Shown: piece after piece, positions 5,939-49,275 of the stretch
Numbering within the stretch: the first letter of the stretch is position 1
How the letters are laid out: every line of letters begins with the position of its first letter
NCBI RefSeq assembly: GCF_964204865.1
Contig: NC_135261.1
Location: 8,990,001-9,054,000, forward strand
Origin: Styela clava
Taxonomy: Eukaryota
DNA: 64,000 nt
Direction: 5' to 3'
The notes under the pieces: model-generated
What the model was told of the DNA's origin: nothing
Seen by the model: only the letters and a program-made list of their open reading frames with translations
Database searches by the model: none
Made by a program: the position numbers and the translations under genes

Positions 5939-8900
5939 ATGAACACGTGGAAAGTTGCAATTCCTATTCTCTTATGGGTATTATACGTAGAAGGTAAGTC
6001 AGTGGTGAGTTGTTAAAACTTCAATTTGCTTACTTGATGCCAATTAGTCCAGACTTTATTGTCACGATCGAGGCATAAAGCACTTTTCGTGGAAAGAAAA
6101 GTCGAAATTGTTGATAATTATCGAAAATTAGCCTAAACATTAGCACGACTAATAGAAAAGCTCATCATGATAAAATTGCGTCACTTTTAATTTCAAATAA
6201 CAAAGTCATTAAAAATAACATATTTTTAACAGTCATATGTCTATGGAAATATTTTATTACTGATGTCAAATTCGAATAACGACTAAGAAAAAATGACGCA
6301 TTATGACAGGTTTCACTCACTGGATTTGTATTGCAATAACGCGACAGTATTTAACAGTACTACTTTATTATGTATTGGAAGAATTTTGCGATATTATTGT
6401 TTTTTTTCATTTAATTTGGCTAATAAATGAAACATATTTTATCAGGTGTTTTTATATGGAACCTCGCACTAGAAACATTTTTATTTGATTGACCTATTTT
6501 CATGTTTCCTACATTCATATTGGCTGAACCTTTATAAAAAATAAACAAATTGTTTGAAATTTCTGAATATCTTTGAAGCTAATAAAACTCAAAATTGCTT
6601 TTAATTATGCTTTCAACACAAAGATTGATATAGAAACGTAATGAAACGAAACGTGATAGAAACGTAAAAATAAATAGCAAAATACCATGCTTTGATGATA
6701 TTTGTCGCTTTTTTCAAGTTTGCCAAATATATTATTTAACATGAAAAATATAGTATACAGTAACACAGATATTGGAATTTGTTCGAAATTTTTCGAAAAA
6801 TCGAGTTTTTGGTGGTCCTGCATCCGCTATTGCGACTGTCTGTGATTTTAAAACTCTGTATATTGCCAGAAAAAACGCATATCGCACCGAAACTTTTGGT
6901 TTTGAAGTGTTTTTCGTTTAAAGTACCTTTTCGTAATTATTGAAAGCTCTTATTACTATAATAATGAAAAGCAAACAAAATGCAATGAAAAACTGCGTGA
7001 ATTTTGATCGCAGAAATTCTTTTAGAAAGTGATTCTATGATACATTTTGGCAAGCATTAACGATGCATAGTAACGGACAGTCATAGATCATTATATAAAG
7101 ATCTATATATAACACAGCATCGATCGAAACTCTGAACAGACATAACTCATAAATAATGCCAGATTATTTAGTTAGATTTATACAGCGGATCAATAAACAA
7201 ATAGAGGATTAATAATAATAATATAATAGAACATTCTACCCATAATTGATACAAAATACATTTCACGCGGCATTGTGCATCAAGGTTTGAATCAGATCTT
7301 TCAAGCTCTGAAAAAGATGCGAATAAATCAGCAAATGTCACCACCACGTGGCCCCGTACATCAATCAGGTCCTGTGCATACCCAAACTCCTCATCGACAA
7401 CAAATATTGCGGATATACCGAGTTTCTCTACATTTAAACACTTATATGTTCTACATATTCCACTGATGCTTTTTTTTTTATTATCACTAAAATATTTCGT
7501 TAACTTAGATTATACCGTATTTGTTGAAACCCGCCGAACTTAAAGAACCGATTGATTTTTAATTATAGGATGCCGCTACAGGAAAACTGGCAACTCATTA
7601 CTCGACAATAGAAAACAAACATCTGCGGACAATGACGTAGACCAAGAACTCAGCAATTTCTTTTCAAGCTGTATGTTTCAGAAAACTGGGAGCGTTTTTC
7701 CTTCTTGGATAAGTGTAGTTGACTTTGTTCTACGGGACACGAGATGGTTTTCTGCATCTGATGAGCAGTTTTGCAAGTATGTTCACATATTTTACACACG
7801 TTCACCGCTGGTCGGTTACGACTTTTTCCACCATCAAGTCGTGAATCTGAAACGAATAACTGACTTACTAATCCCATACTCGACATGTAGCCTACTGATA
7901 ACTGGAAGAAGACCCTGGTTCGCCATATGATTAAGCCGTCTTATCGACTTCCCTTTTTCCTGGCTCATTTTTCTAGCCTAACGGGATATATATTATGATC
8001 CATACCTACATGTGATGTTGAGGAATATTTCAAAATCTAACATCAAATAATATAGCTAATTAATTACCTTAAAGATGAAAAAATTTAAAAATTTGGTAAC
8101 GATGGGGGTTTAATCTAATGAGTTTTGTACTTTTTAAATCTGAAAATTCTTTAACGAGGTTTCTAAGAGGTATTGCACTAAATATAGTAATTGAATTAAC
8201 AGAGAAAAAATGAGCGAAGAAATCAATTCAGTGGAATGCTGGCAACATCGTATGGATCGACTTGTTCGCAATGGATCCGAGCTATTGTCTCCCGCTAAAG
8301 ATTGTGTTGCTGAATATTTATTTGAATACGGTATGCTTCAGCCCCCTTTCTCTTCCACAGTACATTATTTATTCTATTATTATTTATTGTATATATTATT
8401 TTTACGTACTTAGATTTTGTTAATGGCCGAGCGAAATTTACAACTCCTTCAACAACGAGAATAGAATATTGCTTGGACGGGACTGAAGAGGAATACAATC
8501 AGTGCGTGTTCAATAAGTTGTTGACTACAAGTAATAAGAAAAAGTATTCGTCTTTAAGAGATTACCATCAAGGATCTGTAGAGCAGTTTGTAAAGAACCA
8601 TATTTCTAACTGCAGGTAAGAGATAATAAAATTTATGCAAGGTTGACGTCACAATGATTGAAGGTGGAACGTGATTTCTCCCACCTTTGACCTTATATAC
8701 ATCGTTCTCTGTTGGTGACAAGCACGAGATTTTGAATACTTATTTTGAGACGGATTTCGCGAATTTCTACTGCTGGTTTGTCTCCATTAAGCAATCGCAC
8801 CTATGAAGTATTGCAAGGTTTAAAATATGGTAGGCTACAGGCACTTTTAAAAAATGCTGAATAAATGATACCATTGGTGACTTTCGAGTTACCAAACATG

Positions 8901-11900
8901 GTTTGTATTGTATGTATGGGATTTTGAAGATCATTTGCTCAAACCAGGGTCACAAGCGCGTACTCGAAGGTGAAGGATATTCATCTCCATAAGTACGGGT
9001 GACCATCAAAATGCCGCGGACTGGTGGAACTATATGAAATTGTGGTGATGCGTTATGCGCAAATAAGTTCCGATCAACGCGACTACACAACTAAAGATTC
9101 AGGAAAAAGGCTTTTGGCGGCATAATGCTTTTTCTATCTAGAGGTACTCTGATGCATTATATACGCAATGAAGCCAAATTCCATTTGTTACAGAATCAAG
9201 AATGCTCAAATTCTTGGAAGTCACGTTTACACAGAAGACTGTACAATACATTCTTCTGAAAATTCTCGACTGTGCATATCAACGGTATTTCAGGAAATAG
9301 TAAAAACATCTTCTCCACTCTACGAAGCAACGACAAAATGTATTGTACAGTTGTCTCAAAAGTCGGGTACGAATATAATAGTTTGCATGAATCTAATGAC
9401 CACGACGACACCATATGAAATACTTACAAAATGACTTATACCTAAAAATACTTACAAATTTCCAATATATCATTTAAGGATTAGAAAATCGTAATTATTT
9501 TTTCTATGAAATGTGCTATTTTCACCAGGCAGTAGCGGCACATTATTACACATTACATGTTATACATGGCCAGCCATATTAAATGCATGTTATGATAATC
9601 GCAGTTTTATACAATTTACAGCAGAAAAACCTCCCGAGAAAATGGCATCAAACAAAAGATGTGATCTGATAATCTGCACCCAAGATCATCAACACTGCGA
9701 TGAGAACAAAGGTGTATGTATATGTGATTCTGGATATAAATATAATTTAGGAAAATGCAGGCTCATTTCTAATAAAACTACAGAGAATGCAAATAGCAAA
9801 TGCAATGATGTTTCTTGCGAAGGAGTACACCAACATTGCGACGAAGATAATGGAAATTGTGTGTGCAATGATGGTTATGAGGAAGTATCTGGGCAATGCC
9901 AAACCGCCATATTTCCATCTAGCGCTGATAAACTTGATTCTGAAAATAAATGCTGCGGTGTGACTTGTAAAGAACCGCACCAGCGCTGTGATGCAGAAGT
10001 GGGTGCGTGCGTTTGCGACGTCGGTTTTAAAACCGTTTCAGGAAAGTGTATAGCATAAATGGTTGTTAGATGAATGTTATGTTACCATATATTGCTAATT
10101 TGTAGATTGGCTCTGACTTGCAAGTCACCCGTTCACCCTTCAGCTTCAACGCCCACGTGAATGAAGGAAACTTTAGAAAACTCTGTTTGATTTTATTCTC
10201 AGATTTCCACGATACACAGAATATAAATCTTATAACATTTATCCAGACTAGCTTAGAATGGTTTACATCGTCTTCTCTCTCTATCGAAAGATATCGGAGT
10301 CGTATTTATACGTTGATCATAAATCCAATTAAAAGCTGTAAACGTGAGCTCGTGATTTACGTTATTAACAGAAACTCCTGTTATCTTCATAAGGGTAATT
10401 ATGTACATCGTACGGATGGGAACTTAGATATAATTATTTCAATCAGTGCCAAAGGTCTTGAGAATATAAATTTTAATTTGATAATGACTGGGTGGAACAT
10501 GTTATGTTTCTTAAACTGGTGTAATTTGATTCCTACGAAAGTCTTTGTTCGAATTTTGGGAAAAAATAACTTTGTCATGATGATTTCAACATGAAATGGG
10601 GTAGATTTGGGGGTTAGTTGCTATATTATCTCCCCATCTTACTAACTGGAAGTTTAAAGATTTGGCACCCTCTAATAAATTGAAAATATATAGTAAAATA
10701 CAATACACAATGCTAAAATTAATGATATATATATATAGGTCAAAAAAATATTTACATGTATATGATCTACAATGAGACAAGAAATTGAAGTAAAGAAAGT
10801 TTATAGAAAGGGTAAAGGTTGTAAAGTAGAATTACAGAAGGATGGCGTATTTTTATTTGAAAAATTTTGGTTTGGACGGTTAAAACATATTTTCAATTCA
10901 ATGTTTTTCGCTAAGTTAAAATACTTATACTCGCTTTATCGCATTGTTACGATTTTGTAGACCTAGTTGGTCAATATATGCTTGTCCCATGTCGGGAAGA
11001 AAAAACGCGTTGCGACCTAGTTGGTCAATATATGCTTGTCCCATGTCGGGAAGAAAAAACGCGTTGCGACCTAGTTGGTCTATATATTTGTCCCATGTCG
11101 GGATGAAAAAAACGCGTTGCGACCTAGTTGGTCTATATATGCTTGTCCCATGTCGGGAAGAAAAAACGCATTTTTAAGTTTATGCCATCTCAGGGCTTTT
11201 TTGAAAAAATAACGCTTTTGGATACAATTTTTGTTAAACGAGCTTATTATTTCACCGTTCTATATGACGGCTTTGTAAATAATTAAAAGTATGACTCGCT
11301 CGAATCTACTTTTAGAGAGTATTTTAATGATAACGAAATCTATTTAATCGAAAAGGAATGTTAACCACAAATATTTAATAATATAAATCTTTTTAAAGGT
11401 ATTTGAAATTACAATATTCAAAGTTGTTACCATTAATTAATTTATAAAAATTGAAAGTCGAATGAAACGCCATGTGTATATATAAGAAGAAAAAGAAGTA
11501 CTTTACCTTAGTAATAGTGGAAGAATGAAAAATGTCTGTCTCAATGAGGAGAAAAACCTGCAAATCATGAAACAAATTGTGGAATTACATGCTCCTGATC
11601 TGTATATCCATTAGGTAAGCGCGACAATTTCTCTATTGTTCGGAATAGAGCGCGTAATTTACAGTAAAACAGTCCATATAGTTCATTGTTTTCAACAGTT
11701 CGTTTTTGATTAGGTTTTTCACCTCGAACATATATCATGTTCTAAAAGAGTTCATTTCGATCGATGTTCAATACAGTCCATATTCATGATTTTAACGTTT
11801 CCAGAGTCCGTTACCATAGTTCAACTGTTTTCAATTGAGATTATTGTCTTTTCATAATGTTTTTGATTATTTCGGCTTGTCAGCAATTTGCTACTTCAAT

Positions 11901-14900
11901 CGTTGTTCCAGGCAATTTGAATCTCCCCGACGTTCGTAAGTTCGCACGTTTTGTGGAGACGGTTTCTCGGCACTTATTGAAAGCTTTCGCTTGGTCAGCT
12001 TTTTGGTTGATTCCGTCAAATTGTTGCCAGTCCTGATTGTTGTCCGTTGATCTGGTCCGTTTCAGAAGGTTAATTCAAGTCGGTTTTGTCACCATTTATA
12101 GCATATATGTTGAGAAAACTCTGTTTGATTTTATTCTCAGATTTCCACGATACACAGAATATAAATCTTATAACATTTATCCAGACTAGCTTAGAATGGT
12201 TTACATCGTCTTCTCTCTCTATCGAAAGATATCGGAGTCGTATTTATACGTTGATCATAAATCCAATTAAAAGCTGTAAACGTGAGCTCGTGATTTACGT
12301 TATTAACAGAAACTCCTGTTATCTTCATAAGGGTAATTATGTACATCGTACGGATGGGAACTTAGATATAATTATTTCAATCAGTGCCAAAGGTCTTGAG
12401 AATATAAATTTTAATTTGATAATGACTGGATGGAACATGTTATGTTTCTTAAACTGGTGTAATTTGATTCCTACGAAAGTCTTTGTTCGAATTTTGGGAA
12501 AAAATAACTTTGTCATGATGATTTCAACATGAAATGGGGTAGATTTGGGGGTTAGTTGCTATAAGTGCACAGAGGATATTAAAGAAACAAAACCTAACCA
12601 AAACAAAACGGTTGGGAGATGTCGCCTGATAACATGCATTGGACTGCATCAGCACTGTGATGAAGAAATGGGGGCGTGCGTTTGTGATGAGGGGTACAAA
12701 TACATTTCTGAGAAATGTCAGAAAGTAAAGCACAATTATTCAAAAGATCATAATATGGCAACATACAAATGCCAACGCACAATTTGTGGAAAACAACATG
12801 AACATTGTAATGAGATGGATGGTACATGCATATGTGATGATGGATATAAAAATGTTACAGGACAGTGTGTACTGGCACAGCAGATGTTGAATGAAGATGA
12901 GACTATGAAGGATGTCCAAAGTAAAAAGTTTAGACTTTTTCTCATTCAATTCAAGTTTAATGTATGCAATGAACCAACAACGTGACATTCCAATTATATA
13001 AGTAACGTTTCTGAGGTGTTCATTAACTACTAACCTTGCTTCGTATAAGAAATATTTGTGAAGATATATTAGGGGCAATTACCATACGTCCTTTGGGTTA
13101 AGGCCGTTTATTGAAATGTATTCTAGAAAATATTTTTCAAGTAACATTACGGTAATATTTTTAGGAGTAATAGTATATGCAATAGGCATAAATACCCTCT
13201 TTTACAACAGTCTCATGCAATACTTATTACGGTATTCTAGCTTCTATTGTCGAATTCGGGACAAGATGGCACATAAGTTGTCAGTCTTATCGAAAGTTAT
13301 TTCACACAAAACGTGACAACTTGCGTTTACTATGAGACCTGTGCTGTCCATAATGTAATTAATGACTGTGTGCTTTGTCTGGCCCGGGAAGATGTCAAAA
13401 GCGTCGTTCATTATTTAGCGTACTGGCCACCTGCACAAAAATATACCTCGATTTTTTTTCACTTGGACTAGGTTATGGATATCTTTTCGGAAAAATGACT
13501 ATTGAGAACTAGTCAAACCATAAGGTAGGCCTTATACACGTCGATAAAGAAGCTATGATATTTTATTTTTCAGATTCATTTCCAATTGAATCTATTTTGT
13601 TCACACTGTCCGACGAAAAAAATGAAAATGCTCGCGTCCGCTACTTATCGGTAAGGTTGCTTCATTTATATTTCATTTGTTTATTGTACAGTATATTAAT
13701 CATGTATATGATTATCCAGAAATATCTTAATTAAGGCCAATTCATCAATGACACAAGTCATCAACGGCGATCTGGCGATGGAAACTTTAATGGACATGCT
13801 TGATGGAAAAGATGCTGATTATTGGGGAATGGTTGCAAGTTATGAAACCGGGAAAATATATTTTAACGATTACAAGTAAGATTTTGTTAAAGTTGTGTAG
13901 ATAAGCATGAATTGATTTCAGGAAAATGTTCAATATCAGTCGAAATCTAGACGAATTTGTTTATTACCCACGAGGCACACAAAAGCTCGTTTTTCAAGGA
14001 TTCTTCTCGAGCCACTCTTTAAAAAGACTTAACTTGCTTTGATTTATTGACGTTTTGACTAGCACTAACTTTTGTTGAATGTCATAATGTGCGAACAATG
14101 GCGCTGGGAGACTAAAGTTGTAAATGCAAGGCCGGATTTGGGCTTAATCTGCATACTTGAACCACAGCTCGTACTTGTCTACATCACTTGACTCGATTTA
14201 ACTGCAGTAGATTTTGGACTAGATTTTGATTACTTGCTGTCAGTTGAAATTATACTTTGCATAGAATATTTACCGGACCACACATCGACTCTTTACAGGC
14301 AAGCTTGCCTCCATGAGTATGATGCACATAGCAATAAAATTGAGGCCATCGCAAATGATTTAACCGGTGGATTGGAGAACTTGGAGTATGATCGAATAAC
14401 AAACGTACTATATTGGACTGATTCAATAGATAAAACGATCATAGCAATGGAGGGCACATATCAACATTTTACGAAAATATATCAATCTGATTCAGTAGCG
14501 CCATATGGACTGGCATTACATACTACAAAGAGGTAGGTAACGTCTTTCCAATGGCCTTTAAGGGCGAAGGAAAGATGACCATGAAACCTTAATTTTGACT
14601 TTAAAATAATTTTTGGAGACATCGACTTGTCTTTACAGGCTAATATATTTCATTCGTACAGGATGCTATTTTTCTCTGTGTACAAATTGGAAAAAGGATT
14701 TATCTCAGATTCAGCTTTGGTCAAGTGTGATCTAGATGGCGGAAACCAAGAAAGTATATTGCAATTTCCATATGTGATCAGACCACGAAGTCTCGCAATT
14801 GACTATGCCACAGACAAGTAAGATTTTTAAAACCAAATCGTTCACATAGGGTTCATTGTTGAAATAGATTAAGTGGGCCCGATTCTACCCACAAGGGTCA

Positions 14901-17900
14901 AGACAGTGAAATTATATATCTTATGTAATGGAATCAAAAGCGATTGTTGATTACGTTTGGATTTATTTAATTTAAAAGCCTTTGAGTTGTCCATTTATTT
15001 TCTGTTTCGAGCCAAAATTAGCTAATTTTTAAGGTTGCTAATATATTGATTAGTATTTATTGGACCGACGTGTCAATGCACGGAGATTCTCTGGTAATGA
15101 TGAGCAAATTAGACGGAACTCAATCGAAGAGCATATTTTCAAGGGAAACAGGTTATTTCTGGGGAATAGCTATCTCACAGGTGAGTCATTTAGAATTCTT
15201 CTGCAAAAGTGCTGTTATACTTTCTTGTATAAAAATTAGAATTGCCAAATGAGGACGGAACTTCTGCGGTTCGTTCAAAAATTTCAACGTTTGCAGCTAG
15301 AGCGAACAAAAGCTAGCATCGGCAATACCACAGGACCCCCTGGATTACTTATTTATACCGGGGCAGAGGAAGGCCGATAAGGAGATTCGAACCCACGAAG
15401 GGTAACCGGAGGTGTATTCCTAATGCCTAGCATGATGCGCCACACCGCCGAGCCGACAATACGATGACAAAACTCTCATATCCGACATATCTTACATTTC
15501 TTGCGTGTGGAATTATGTACAAAAGAAATGACTATTGATATTAATTACCCTCTTCCATCTAGGAAAATATTTACGTCACCAATACGCTGAACGTCACAAC
15601 AGACAAATACGAAACATACGTCATACGTAAAGACGGAAGATCTCATTCCACCATCACGACCAATACTAAACCACGACACGTGTCGGTTTATGCTTCAAAC
15701 GAAGTATCCACGGTGCCAGGTAAATTTTTGGGCTAGAAGTATGTATATTTGTATTTTTCAATTATTTCCTGATACGTGCCAAAATGTATTTCAGTGAAAA
15801 ATGAATGCGAGTTTAACAAGTGTGATCACATATGTCTTTCGTCGTCGACCGGTGAACATAGATGCATGTGCTCTTCTGGCTTTCAGTTAAAGTTCGGTTC
15901 AATATGTGAAACAAGTAAGTATCATAAAAAGTAATTTTTGTCGTTATCTTTGACTTTCGTGCATGTGTTCTTCTGGTTTTCAGTTGAAGTTCGGTTTAAA
16001 ATGTGAAACAAGTAAGTACCATTAGGAATAAATCTTGTCGTAATGTTTGCCTTTCGTAGGAGTACTTTAAGGACAGGGGTCACGCATCACTGATGATTTA
16101 CTTTAGTTTGAATCACCCAGGAGCATGGCTGGCATTGACGCAGAGCAGTTCTCATATCCAATCTGAACTAGTAACCGTGGTTCCCGTTTTTTAATCTAGT
16201 GCCATCCAATGATAACAGTTGTAGCAAAAAATTTTTTTTAGCTGTTACTATGAAATCCGAAATGGCATACAGCAAGGTAGTGTCATGGGTCCATTCCTGT
16301 TTTTTATTTTTAATTTGACCACAACATATAAGGGGATAAAACATCAACTCCAATTCCACAGGTCCTCTCCTGAACGATTATTTACTCGTTGCCGATATCG
16401 GACAAAAGGGTTTGTTTCAAATACCATTCGACGACAAAGAAGAAAATCTAGGAAACATGACTGCAATAGATGGTTTGTTTAAATGGTGTAATATTGAATA
16501 ACGAGACAACAAATTTACTTCAAATTTGCTAATTTTCGCTTCGAACCTTCCCAGTTCACACAACGGAGAAAATATACGCGGTTGCCGTGGATCCAAGCAA
16601 CGGTGAGATGGCATGGTACGACTTAGAAAAAGAAGAAATTTTCTGGGGACATAGAATATTGTCATTTGGAGAAGCCGGTATGTTGCTGGACTAGTATTCT
16701 GATGAGCCGCGGTGATTTGCAATATGATTAAGCCATCTTGGTTCATTTCATCTCTGTTGTTTATTCCCAAAACGTCTCTTTTCTGGTAGGTGGTGGTAGC
16801 CTGATTACAATACCGCAATTCTATCGGTTTATTGAGTCGTTTAATCTGCTTTTTTTTCGGTGAATACGGTCGGCTCTTTTTTTTCAGTTTCAAGTATAGT
16901 TATACATCCTTGTGAAGAAAAGATATATTGGGCTTCAATTACGGGAATATACTCATGGGATGGAAAACGATCATTTGCAATTAAAACTTTATATACATCT
17001 TCAGTTTTCACAAACATGGAAATTCGAGAAATTGAGATCGACTTTTTACGAAGGTAATCCCTTTAGATTCGATTTGTTATTATAACTTACAAAACCAATG
17101 TGCACCATATAATTCAACCATTGTTTTACAGTCGGATTTACTGGACAGAATACGATGCTCTATTTCAGAAAGGACGTATTATGCAAAGTAATTTAGATGG
17201 AAAGAACAGAAAACGGGTGCTTGACACCAAAATTGTTAAAGGAATGACAATTGACTATGAAAGTGAGTATAAACTAATAAATATGATAAGCACTAGAATT
17301 GAAAAACTTAATTCGTCATATAACAATTAAATATAGCTACTCGTTAGTCGTTATAGAGCACACAGATTGATCTGAACCTAGACTAACAAGAAGCATTAAT
17401 CCAACCCGGAAAATACCTCAAATAAAGCTCAGATACTCTAACCCTAAATAGAGTTTATCATCTTCTTGAGTGTGTCTACGAAAATTTGAAATAGCGTCTT
17501 CAACAAACTGATTGTAAACCATGCCGGTTCAGGCTTACAAAGATGACTATAGCTTTATTAAATTAAAGCGAACCTGAAACGCGTGAAAAAAAAACTCCGA
17601 AAATATATAGGCTGTATGTTGCATTCGAAAATGTACAATCCTTTAAAAAACAATTACAAATATATTCAGCAGCTTAACAATATTTTCTATTTCAAATAAT
17701 CTATTTTATTCCTTTTGACAGCTGATACCCTTTACGTTATGTCAATGGTTGATGGCACTATGTATTCAATACAACTGGATCAAGCAAATAAACTACCACT
17801 GAATCAAAATACATACAGCGTCACTAAAATCACACCATTTTTAAAAGAGGGAACTTTCCTAATATTCGAGTAAGTGAAATAGCAATTATCGAAAATGCAA

Positions 17901-46563: not shown

Positions 46564-47157
46564 ATGGCAGAACTATTGAAAAGCAGTCAAATATGTGTGC
46601 CGGGGGAACGTCTCGCAAGTGCTGAACACCATCGGGCAGGATTTGGAACTTATGTAAAACGAGGATATATATTTGCATCATTAGCTGGCATGGTTCGGAG
46701 CGAACAAAATGACAAGGATATAATTACTGTATCTGTGCGATCCAAGCACCATCAACAACTTCTCCCACAAATCGATTCCATAGTCACTTGTAAAGTCACA
46801 GGAATCAGCGGTCGCTTTGCAAAATGTTTAATTACAGCCGTTAATAACGCGAGGTTGTCCGAGCCATTGCGAGGCATCATAAGACGTGAGGACGTACGTG
46901 CAAAGGACATTGAAAAAGTTGAAATTCCGAAATGTTTTCGTCCCGGTGATGTAGTTTTAGCAAAAGTTTTGTCACTAGGTGATGCATCATCTTATTTGTT
47001 AACTACAGCGGAAAATGGACTCGGTGTTGTTCTTGCACGTAGTGAAGCCGGAGAACTGATGTTGCCTATCAGTTGGCAAGAAATGCAATGTCCTGTTTCG
47101 TATGTAAAAGAATCGCGTAAAGTTGCAAGACCACAGGAACATTATTTAAAACAATAA
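46564..47157 (+). CDS. EXOSC1: Exosome complex component CSL4
   Basis: 197-aa ORF: CVPGERL...GFGTY...IFASLAG, S1-like domain (GIIRREDVRA...FRPGDVVLAKVLSLGD), C-terminal MLPISWQEMQCP...ESRKVARP. Single coding exon. Confidence 0.96.
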   Translation: MAELLKSSQICVPGERLASAEHHRAGFGTYVKRGYIFASLAGMVRSEQNDKDIITVSVRSKHHQQLLPQIDSIVTCKVTGISGRFAKCLITAVNNARLSEPLRGIIRREDVRAKDIEKVEIPKCFRPGDVVLAKVLSLGDASSYLLTTAENGLGVVLARSEAGELMLPISWQEMQCPVSYVKESRKVARPQEHYLKQ

Positions 47158-48126: not shown

Positions 48127-49275
48127 ATGTTAATTTTCAAAAAGCTGTCGTTGCGGCCGTTTCCATATCTTTCAGTTCGATTCAAATCTTTAAAACCATA
48201 CTCTAAGCACGCATTTTTATCAGGTGATTATGACATCACAAAGACATTTCCTAAAGACTCTTATGAATTTAATTACATACGAAACCTTGCTAATGGAATT
48301 AAGAATAAAGATCGGGCCACACTCGCTCGTGCTATAACTTTAGTTGAATCAACAAATAAACAGAAAAAATTGATGGGACAGATTTTGCTACAATTGGTAA
48401 TATCGGAAACATCAAGATCTTCGCAAAAATCTTTTCGAATCGGACTTTCTGGACCCCCAGGTGCAGGGAAGTCTACATTCATTGAAACAATGGGAAGCTA
48501 CCTTACTGAAAAACATGATTTAAAAGTCGCAATTCTAGCTGTAGACCCCTCTTCAAGTCGAACAGGGGGGTCACTTCTCGGAGATAAAACAAGAATGACA
48601 AACTTGTCTCGTAATCCGAAAGCATACATTCGTCCTTCACCTGCTCAGGGTACACTAGGTGGTGTAACACGAAACACTACTGAAGCTATGATATTATGTG
48701 AAAGCGCTGGTTATGATGTCATAATAGTAGAAACCGTCGGTGTCGGTCAAAGTGAAGTCGCGGTTGCAGACATGACTGATTTATTTGTATTGCTCATACC
48801 ACCAGCTAGTGGTGACGAACTTCAGGGCATCAAAAGAGGGATTATAGAGATGACAGATCTAGTAGTAATAAATAAAGCTGATGGCGATTTACTTCCAGCT
48901 GCTAGAAGACTACAATCAGAATACACGAGCGCTTTGAAATTTATACCACGTAAACATAATTTTTGGAGACAACGGGTACGCAGAGTGTCATCTATAACAG
49001 AAGAAGGTATCTCTGAACTGTGGTCCGTGATGCAAATATTTCACGAGGAAATGATTAAAAGTGGGACTTTTGAATCATTGCGTAGAAATCAAAGAGCCAT
49101 TTGGATGTGGAATCATATAAAAGATAATATTTTGGAAGATTTTGCGAGTGATTATGATGTATCGAAAGCGCTTCCAAGTTTGGAAGAACAAGTTAAAAAT
49201 TGTAAAATGACTCCTGGCCTTGCAGCAGATTTATTATTAAACTGTTTATTTAAAAAAGATGATAAAAATAGATAA
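48127..49275 (+). CDS. MMAA: Methylmalonic aciduria type A protein (MeaB/ArgK-family GTPase), mitochondrial
   Basis: 382-aa ORF with basic N-terminal presequence, LARAITLVES, GLSGPPGAGKST P-loop, AVDPSS...GGSLLGDKTRM, ETVGVGQSE, GDELQGIKRG, NKADGD. Single coding exon. Confidence 0.97.
   Translation: MLIFKKLSLRPFPYLSVRFKSLKPYSKHAFLSGDYDITKTFPKDSYEFNYIRNLANGIKNKDRATLARAITLVESTNKQKKLMGQILLQLVISETSRSSQKSFRIGLSGPPGAGKSTFIETMGSYLTEKHDLKVAILAVDPSSSRTGGSLLGDKTRMTNLSRNPKAYIRPSPAQGTLGGVTRNTTEAMILCESAGYDVIIVETVGVGQSEVAVADMTDLFVLLIPPASGDELQGIKRGIIEMTDLVVINKADGDLLPAARRLQSEYTSALKFIPRKHNFWRQRVRRVSSITEEGISELWSVMQIFHEEMIKSGTFESLRRNQRAIWMWNHIKDNILEDFASDYDVSKALPSLEEQVKNCKMTPGLAADLLLNCLFKKDDKNR

What the first reader, a model, noticed from the sequence alone, without database searches (positions are those of the whole stretch)
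10045..12567. Recent LTR-element insertion splits an EGF-repeat exon; excision restores the frame exactly
The EGF ORF 9513-10058 stops (TAA 10056-58) 7 nt inside the element and resumes in ORF 12545-12985. Deleting 10049-12567 (element plus one AGTG) gives gga aag tg|c aca gag = ...SGKC-TEDIKETK..., one exon with five EGF-like repeats. Downstream exons have intact frames and splice sites, and the LTRs differ by 1 nt in 451, so the insertion is very young. It is probably a segregating null allele, or it gives a truncated secreted protein lacking both propellers.
Basis: seen in the sequence. Interest (0 to 1): 0.85.

Follow-up and report, generated by a model that had tools for sequence, protein, structure and literature searches.

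The report
Young retrotransposon splits sea-squirt gene exon
In this sea-squirt (Styela clava) reference genome, a recently inserted 2.5-kb non-coding retrotransposon cuts a coding exon of a secreted LRP-like protein in two; other animals carry and express the uninterrupted gene, so this is an ordinary but well-documented presence/absence mutation that also truncated the public gene model.

Summary
A 2515-bp non-coding LTR element lies at 10049-12563, antisense to the gene, flanked by a 4-bp duplication (AGTG). It sits in the last Cys codon of the third EGF-like repeat of a 780-nt exon. Removing the element plus one AGTG restores the frame.

The predicted empty site exists. It is found in genomic contigs of another animal at full flank depth, in a spliced 3.5-kb RNA contig, and in the older RefSeq proteins XP_039253080/81 (1186-1187 aa). 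RefSeq's model on this assembly (XP_077974700, 756 aa) starts only downstream of the insertion.

The filled allele was seen only in the assembly. Raw Hi-C reads gave no junction coverage, so its frequency and its effect on RNA are untested.

The family has about 60-70 copies, nearly all with identical U3 regions and their own 4-bp duplications. No parent copy or autonomous partner was found.

One correction: the two LTRs also differ by a 110-nt indel at the U5 end. Across 30 copies such U5-end differences are present from birth. This departs from textbook reverse transcription.

First-stage notes of this scan cover the same stretch. Another unchecked note reports a transposon-split exon elsewhere in this genome.

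The parts
9622..10048 (+). Left part (427 nt) of the EGF-like-repeat exon: three six-Cys modules, ending in TG of the last Cys codon of module 3
   Evidence: Intron 9367-9621 with GT..AG in the spliced X5 contig. ORF. Matches residues 255-397 of P0001.
10045..10048 (.). Target-site duplication, copy 1 (AGTG)
   Evidence: 28 of 30 other family copies have their own perfect 4-bp duplication.
10056..10058 (+). Premature stop TAA, 7 nt inside the element; the ORF ends …SGKC-IA*
10049..10625 (-). 3' LTR, long form (577 nt)
10626..10640 (-). Polypurine tract (AAGATGGGGAGATAA in element sense), next to the 3' LTR
   Evidence: Identical in nearly all copies; 68 exact PPT/LTR junctions in the genome.
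10626..12096 (-). Internal region (1471 nt), with no coding capacity detected
   Evidence: Longest internal ORF is 77 aa. No Pfam match.
10946..11172 (.). Four tandem copies of a 53-54-nt unit inside the element
   Evidence: A one-unit length variant appears in reads from other copies (joint 11106->11161).
12079..12094 (-). Primer-binding-site-like TGGTGACAAAACCGAC, 2 nt after the 5' LTR
   Evidence: 58 exact LTR-end/PBS junctions in the genome. No matching tRNA gene found.
12097..12563 (-). 5' LTR, short form (467 nt); lacks 110 nt near its U5 end
12564..12567 (.). Target-site duplication, copy 2 (AGTG)
12568..12920 (+). Right part (353 nt) of the same exon: two more EGF-like modules; donor GT at 12921
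12668..12670 (+). ATG at which RefSeq's truncated model on this assembly (P0013, 756 aa) begins

Best explanation
A member of an active, non-autonomous LTR-retrotransposon family integrated recently into the coding exon 9622-12920 of a single-copy Styela clava gene. Integration was integrase-type and duplicated 4 bp of target.

The gene encodes a secreted 1186-aa protein: signal peptide, Cys-containing N-terminal region, five EGF-like repeats, YWTD propeller, EGF, YWTD propeller, and no transmembrane segment.

The reference haplotype carries the filled allele. Other animals carry and express the empty, intact allele.

On the filled allele the reading frame stops 3 codons after the insertion point. 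The inferred outcome is nonsense-mediated decay, or a 399-residue secreted fragment without propellers.

Shown here: the anatomy of the insertion, the frame restoration, the existence and expression of the empty allele, and the youth and activity of the family. Inferred: loss of function, and that the filled allele segregates beyond the sequenced animal.
For: Structure:
- Element structure, TSD and stop codon.
- Sense orientation from PBS and PPT.
- About 60-70 family copies: 58 PBS junctions and 68 PPT junctions.
- Each of 30 complete copies has its own 4-bp TSD, and 23 of 30 have no difference in the first ~400 nt of their LTRs.
- The exon halves are single-copy in the assembly, so the empty site cannot be a paralogue.

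Empty allele:
- The joint 10043->12563 has 5 ambiguous bases, so it equals 10048|12568. It occurs in X1 at depth 528, against flanks of 400-565. X1 covers the introns too, so it is DNA.
- The same joint occurs in a 3553-nt X5 contig that also skips GT..AG introns, so it is RNA.
- Full-length P0001/P0014 (XP_039253081/80, S. clava) read through the site.
- P0013 (XP_077974700) lies on a contig of 21,360,319 bases, which is the length of this window's contig C16. It starts at Met431.

Protein features: no 19-residue window is hydrophobic enough for a membrane span apart from the signal peptide, and there are three YWTD/E motifs.
Against: - The filled junctions were not confirmed by reads. The only raw-read run (X23, Hi-C) had about zero depth on the unique flanks.
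- No run other than the assembly was shown to hold the filled allele.
- No RNA from a carrier was available, so decay or truncation is inference.
- No near-identical parent copy is in the assembly; the closest is 93% identical.
- No matching tRNA gene and no autonomous partner were found.
Confidence: 0.85

Rival explanations
1. The insertion is private to the sequenced animal (a de novo or very rare germline event), not an allele that segregates in populations.
For: The filled allele was seen only in the assembly. X1, X5 and the older RefSeq annotation all show the empty site. The family is very active, with most copies having identical U3 regions.
Against: There is one LTR difference in U3 (position 134), where 23 of 30 copies have none. 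This hints at some age, but it could also be a reverse-transcription or assembly error. Only a few animals were sampled.
Confidence: 0.3
2. Carriers are not null. The enlarged exon is skipped, or cryptic sites splice the element out in frame. Skipping is possible because the exon is 780 nt, a multiple of 3. Either route would give a protein that keeps both propellers.
For: The exon is 427+353 = 780 nt. Several in-frame, stop-free GT/GC..AG pairs lie around the element, for example 10046..12555. Introners have been reported in S. clava (PMC12130899).
Against: No GT..AG pair restores the exact sequence. The candidate acceptors sit in purine-rich LTR sequence without a pyrimidine tract. No such transcript was seen, but no carrier RNA was examined. 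RefSeq could not join the halves.
Confidence: 0.12
3. The insertion is an assembly artefact, such as a chimeric read or mis-join that placed a repeat copy in the exon.
For: There is no read-level confirmation of the junctions. The element belongs to a repeated family.
Against: The 4-bp duplication of the exact target is perfect. The element is complete, with family-typical ends, PBS and PPT. The flanks are colinear and in frame. Mis-assembly does not create target duplications.
Confidence: 0.03

Closest known systems
Transposable-element insertion polymorphisms that disrupt coding exons (classical LTR-element null alleles)
   Same: Presence/absence alleles, a target-site duplication, a premature stop, and near-identical LTRs.
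   Different: The carrier is the reference assembly itself. The effect on the transcript was not measured.
Non-autonomous LTR retrotransposons (LARD/TRIM-type)
   Same: LTRs, a PBS-like and a PPT motif, no ORFs, many copies each with its own TSD.
   Different: Size is 2.2-2.6 kb with 0.47-0.58-kb LTRs, which lies between TRIM and LARD. The ends are TA…TA (TATAGCA/TGCTATA) rather than TG…CA. The U5 ends of the two LTRs differ from birth. No autonomous partner was identified.
Introners: transposons that become introns on insertion (Gozashti et al. 2025, PMC12130899, which lists S. clava among validated taxa)
   Same: A transposon sits inside a coding exon of S. clava.
   Different: No splice-site pair gives exact removal. 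The empty allele is what is expressed. There is no evidence that this element is spliced.
Ty3/Gypsy-type family with a herpesvirus-gB-like third ORF in the same genome (seen at C17:10786373-10793607)
   Same: 4-bp TSD, an LTR ending …CTATA, a TGG-type PBS 2 nt after the LTR, and a similar PPT (GGGGGAGTTA versus GGGGAGATAA).
   Different: No nucleotide similarity to the element in the window. Its LTR starts TGTAGCC. Whether it mobilises the non-coding family is untested.
LDL-receptor/LRP family (RefSeq names: 'prolow-density lipoprotein receptor-related protein 1-like', 'vitellogenin receptor-like')
   Same: YWTD (Ldl_recept_b) repeats and an EGF module between the two propeller regions.
   Different: No LDL-A repeats by Pfam and no transmembrane segment. 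There are five unusual EGF-like modules and a 250-residue N-terminal region without a Pfam match.

Membership tests
LTR retrotransposon | Two direct long terminal repeats | tested here: met
   454 nt shared at 99.8% identity; full LTRs are 577 and 467 nt.
LTR retrotransposon | Short target-site duplication (4-6 bp), different at each copy | tested here: met
   AGTG in the window; 28 of 30 copies have a perfect 4-bp duplication of their own.
LTR retrotransposon | Polypurine tract directly upstream of the 3' LTR | tested here: met
   AAGATGGGGAGATAA|TATAGCA.
LTR retrotransposon | Primer-binding site complementary to a host tRNA 3' end | tested here: inconclusive
   TGGTGACAAAACCGAC lies 2 nt after the 5' LTR. 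A pattern for a tRNA gene with that 3' end found nothing in the genome.
LTR retrotransposon | Canonical TG…CA termini | tested here: not met
   The ends are TATAGCA…TGCTATA in all copies examined. This is a common feature of the class rather than a strict requirement.
LTR retrotransposon | LTRs identical at the time of insertion | tested here: not met
   In L/L copies, positions 1-535 are identical but the last 42 nt differ by 7.2%. S and L forms occur in all four combinations.
Non-autonomous element (LARD/TRIM-like) | No gag/pol coding capacity | tested here: met
   The longer PBS-PPT spacings in the genome are nested foreign inserts.
Segregating insertion polymorphism | Both the filled and the empty allele exist in the species | tested here: met
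   Filled in the assembly. Empty in X1, in X5 and in XP_039253080/81. The frequency of the filled allele is unknown.
Introner | The element is removed by the spliceosome so that the reading frame is kept | tested here: inconclusive
   No exact GT..AG pair and only poor cryptic pairs. No carrier RNA was available.
LDLR/LRP family (host gene) | YWTD beta-propeller repeats with a flanking EGF | tested here: met
   Ldl_recept_b scores 24.2 bits against a cut-off of 21 on P0001. There are LYWTD, IYWTD and IYWTE motifs and an EGF at 15773-15931.
LDLR/LRP family (host gene) | LDL-receptor class A repeats and a membrane anchor | tested here: not met
   No Ldl_recept_a hit. The highest 19-residue hydropathy outside the signal peptide is 1.17.

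The most novel reading that the evidence does not exclude
In this family the PBS-proximal 40-170 nt of the 5' LTR and the matching end of the 3' LTR come from different parental RNAs at nearly every transposition. A possible route: minus-strand DNA runs past the PBS into the intact U5 of a second packaged RNA before it switches to plus-strand strong-stop DNA. The insertion in the window, with a short 5' LTR and a long 3' LTR, would be one such product. It would be a natural record of a non-textbook step of reverse transcription, and it would bias LTR-based dating.
Probability: 0.4. Interest if true: 0.6.

Novelty: new member of a known kind. Interest (0 to 1): 0.35.

Why it matters
- The reference haplotype of S. 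clava carries a disrupted allele of a secreted LRP-like gene. RefSeq's model on this assembly is therefore an N-terminally truncated artefact (756 instead of 1186-1187 aa, with no signal peptide). Users of the annotation should know this.
- The locus gives a ready presence/absence marker. It also gives a natural loss-of-function candidate for a gene of unknown role.
- It shows that a non-coding LTR family is currently mobile in this invasive ascidian.
- The family's unequal LTR ends mean that LTR-divergence dating must be restricted to the U3-R part.

Tried and rejected
Reads and fetch limits:
- Raw-read check of the filled junctions: run X23 gave almost no depth on the unique flanks, so there is no verdict. 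Read laying and the look-up of sequencing runs are each capped at one call.

Searches that found nothing:
- A word-index protein search with the left ORF found nothing.
- A tRNA gene matching the PBS was not found.

Autonomous partner: not found. The two long PBS-PPT spacings are nested foreign inserts:
- an APE/RT LINE nested in a copy (L023);
- a 3' fragment of a Gypsy-like, gB-env element (L024).

Readings rejected:
- A paralogue as the source of the empty site, because the exon halves are single-copy.
- A later deletion as the cause of the 110-nt LTR difference, because the same short/long pattern recurs in independent insertions.
- Clonal inheritance of the short form, because it shows no clustering on a tree of internal regions.

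The frame was checked by arithmetic. In one search a script counted stops in hypothetical splice products without printing or saving them. No consensus of the element was built or used.
Full report
**1. What is in the sequence**

AGTG occurs at 10045-10048 and again at 12564-12567. Between the two lies a 2515-bp element (10049-12563) that starts TATAGCA and ends TGCTATA.

A direct repeat of 454 nt with a single mismatch (10492 G versus 12430 A) forms the body of two LTRs. The full LTRs are unequal:
- The left LTR is 577 nt (10049-10625).
- The right LTR is 467 nt (12097-12563).
- The difference is a 110-nt indel plus two mismatches at one end.

The element reads in sense on the minus strand. 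On that strand the right LTR is followed after 2 nt by TGGTGACAAAACCGAC, a TGG-type primer-binding-site motif (12079-12094). The left LTR is preceded by the purine run AAGATGGGGAGATAA (10626-10640). So the right LTR is the 5' LTR (short) and the left LTR is the 3' LTR (long), and the element is antisense to the host gene.

The 1471-nt interior has no ORF above 77 aa and no Pfam match. The 148-158-aa ORFs inside the LTRs have none either. The interior holds four copies of a 53-54-nt tandem unit.

**2. The exon and the frame**

- The left ORF has codons starting at positions 0 mod 3 and stops at TAA 10056-58, after …SGKC-IA.
- The right ORF runs in frame 2 mod 3.
- Removing 2519 nt (2 mod 3) joins TG+C into Cys and continues with ACA GAG, which is Thr-Glu.
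- The spliced RNA contig, together with the sequence, sets the exon at 9622-12920. That is 427 + 353 = 780 nt without the insert.
- The exon encodes five six-Cys EGF-like modules. The insertion sits in the last Cys codon of module 3.
- Pfam gives only weak EGF/EB-type hits for these modules.
- Each exon half occurs only once in the 377-Mb assembly.

**3. The empty allele exists and is expressed**

Runs were laid on 8800-13800.

Run X1 covers exons and introns evenly, so it is genomic DNA.
- It has a contig with the joint 10043->12563. Five bases are ambiguous, so this equals 10048|12568.
- The contig's depth is 528, against 400-565 for the flanks. That sample is therefore mostly or wholly empty.
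- Its flanks differ from the window at 1 of 563 positions, so the same haplotype background exists without the element.

Run X5 has a 3553-nt contig that skips the GT..AG introns 9367-9621 and 13652-13734 and carries the same joint. This is mRNA of the intact allele.

A HMMER search with the left exon half found one strong hit, P0001 (1186 aa, E = 3.6e-103).
- It reads …GFKNVSGKCTEDNKETK… through the site.
- Its cluster names it XP_039253081.1, 'prolow-density lipoprotein receptor-related protein 1-like isoform X2 [Styela clava]'.
- Isoform X1 (1187 aa) differs by one Ala at the 9621/9624 tandem acceptor.
- A third member, XP_077974700.1 'vitellogenin receptor-like' (756 aa), lies on a contig of 21,360,319 bases. 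That is the length of this window's contig C16.
- This third member equals residues 431-1186 and starts at ATG 12668.

So the annotation of this very assembly lost the signal peptide and 430 residues because of the insertion.

**4. What was not obtained**

- The only raw-read run (X23, Hi-C) had almost no depth on the unique flanks. The filled junctions therefore rest on the assembly and on their anatomy.
- No run was shown to hold the filled allele, and no carrier RNA was examined.

**5. The family**

- The genome holds 58 exact LTR-end/PBS junctions and 68 exact PPT/LTR-start junctions.
- PBS-to-PPT spacing is 1.3-1.5 kb everywhere except at two loci with nested foreign DNA: an APE/RT LINE (L023), and the 3' part of a Ty3/Gypsy-like element with a herpesvirus-gB-like ORF (L024).
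- No autonomous partner with these ends was found.
- That Gypsy-like family shares the 4-bp duplication, a …CTATA end, a TGG-type PBS and a similar PPT. This is a lead only.
- Of 30 complete copies, 28 have a perfect 4-bp duplication of their own, and 23 have no difference in the first ~400 nt of their LTRs. The family is therefore active now.
- The copy in the window has one such difference (LTR position 134).
- Its closest relative in the assembly is 93% identical overall, and interiors are up to 97% identical. Its parent is therefore not in this assembly.
- The tree of interiors is star-like. This fits the recombining 'clan' behaviour reviewed for LTR elements in PMC6894440.

**6. Unequal LTR ends are a birth feature**

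Short (S, ~467 nt) and long (L, ~577 nt) LTRs occur in all four combinations among the 30 complete copies, each an independent insertion:

| 5' LTR / 3' LTR | Copies |
|---|---|
| L/L | 17 |
| S/L | 8 |
| L/S | 2 |
| S/S | 3 |

In the 16 L/L copies compared, the two LTRs of one copy behave very differently along their length:

| LTR positions | Divergence within a copy | Divergence between copies |
|---|---|---|
| 1-535 | 0-0.1% | 4-7% |
| 536-577 (last 42 nt) | 7.2% | 9.9% |

- The divergent tract begins at a PBS-like TGGTAACATAAC.
- The S state at the 5' LTR shows no clustering on the interior tree: 11 changes for 11 S copies.
- The textbook scheme yields identical LTRs (PMC6894440).
- My inference, untested: minus-strand DNA copied from a second packaged RNA runs past the PBS into that RNA's intact U5 before the second template switch.
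- For the finding, this means the 110-nt indel says nothing about age. Only one change does.

**7. Consequence for the gene**

Inferred only. The stop lies in a large internal exon, with at least a dozen introns downstream. That predicts NMD, or a 399-residue secreted fragment with three EGF-like modules and no propeller.

There are two alternatives:
- The 780-nt exon could be skipped in frame.
- A few in-frame cryptic GT/GC..AG pairs exist, but their acceptors lie in purine-rich LTR sequence, and none restores the exact sequence.

The full-length protein has a signal peptide, three YWTD/E motifs, an Ldl_recept_b hit just above cut-off, no LDL-A repeat and no membrane span.

**8. Verdict**

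The finding is a clean but ordinary transposon insertion polymorphism. Its practical value is for annotation and as a natural mutant. The unusual property lies in the family's LTR ends.

Noticed in passing
window 10049-10197 and 12097-12112; loci L002-L052: The two LTRs of a copy are identical over positions 1-535 but differ in the last ~40 nt almost as much as unrelated copies do. Alternatively they differ by a 110-nt indel. Short and long U5 forms occur in all four 5'/3' combinations across independent insertions.
   Followed up: partly
window 12668 onward (RefSeq XP_077974700.1): The public gene model on this assembly starts at an internal Met in EGF-like module 4 and is named 'vitellogenin receptor-like'. 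The older annotation has 1186-1187 aa and is named LRP1-like. The truncation is an artefact of the insertion.
   Followed up: yes
window 9620-9624: A tandem acceptor (AGCAG) explains RefSeq isoforms X1 and X2, which differ by one alanine at the start of the EGF exon.
   Followed up: partly
window 9621-10048 and 12568-12920: Alleles of the EGF-like exon differ a lot. P0001 differs from the window at 8 of 143 residues in the left half, including a Ser/Cys change (KCSGVTC versus KCCGVTC). X5 differs at 11 of 423 nt. X1's empty allele is identical there, so this is standing variation and not decay after the insertion.
   Followed up: partly
L023 (G000:C13:6553300-6563299): A family copy carries a nested non-LTR retrotransposon with an 854-aa endonuclease-RT ORF and an upstream ORF with a PHD finger.
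   Followed up: partly
L031+L033 (G000:C17:10786373-10793607); L024: A 7.2-kb Ty3/Gypsy-type element has identical 728-bp LTRs (TGTAGCC…CACTATA), TSD GTCC, a 1080-codon RT-RNaseH-integrase frame and a 699-aa ORF with weak similarity to the herpesvirus glycoprotein B ectodomain. At least 12 copies of that ORF are 98-100% identical.
   Followed up: partly
5' flanks of family copies: Many insertion sites show an R-G-T-W-like motif just upstream of the 4-bp duplication (…CAGTA|gaac, …CAGTT|atct, …CAGTG|gatt). This may be a weak target preference.
   Followed up: no
window 8800-13800, run X23: The raw Hi-C reads of the same species label gave near-zero depth on about 2 kb of unique flank, although about 5x was expected. 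The reason is unknown.
   Followed up: no
window 46564-47157 and 48127-49275: There are long single-exon ORFs for a CSL4/EXOSC1-like protein (197 aa) and a MeaB/ArgK-type GTPase-like protein (382 aa). They were named by eye and not searched.
   Followed up: no
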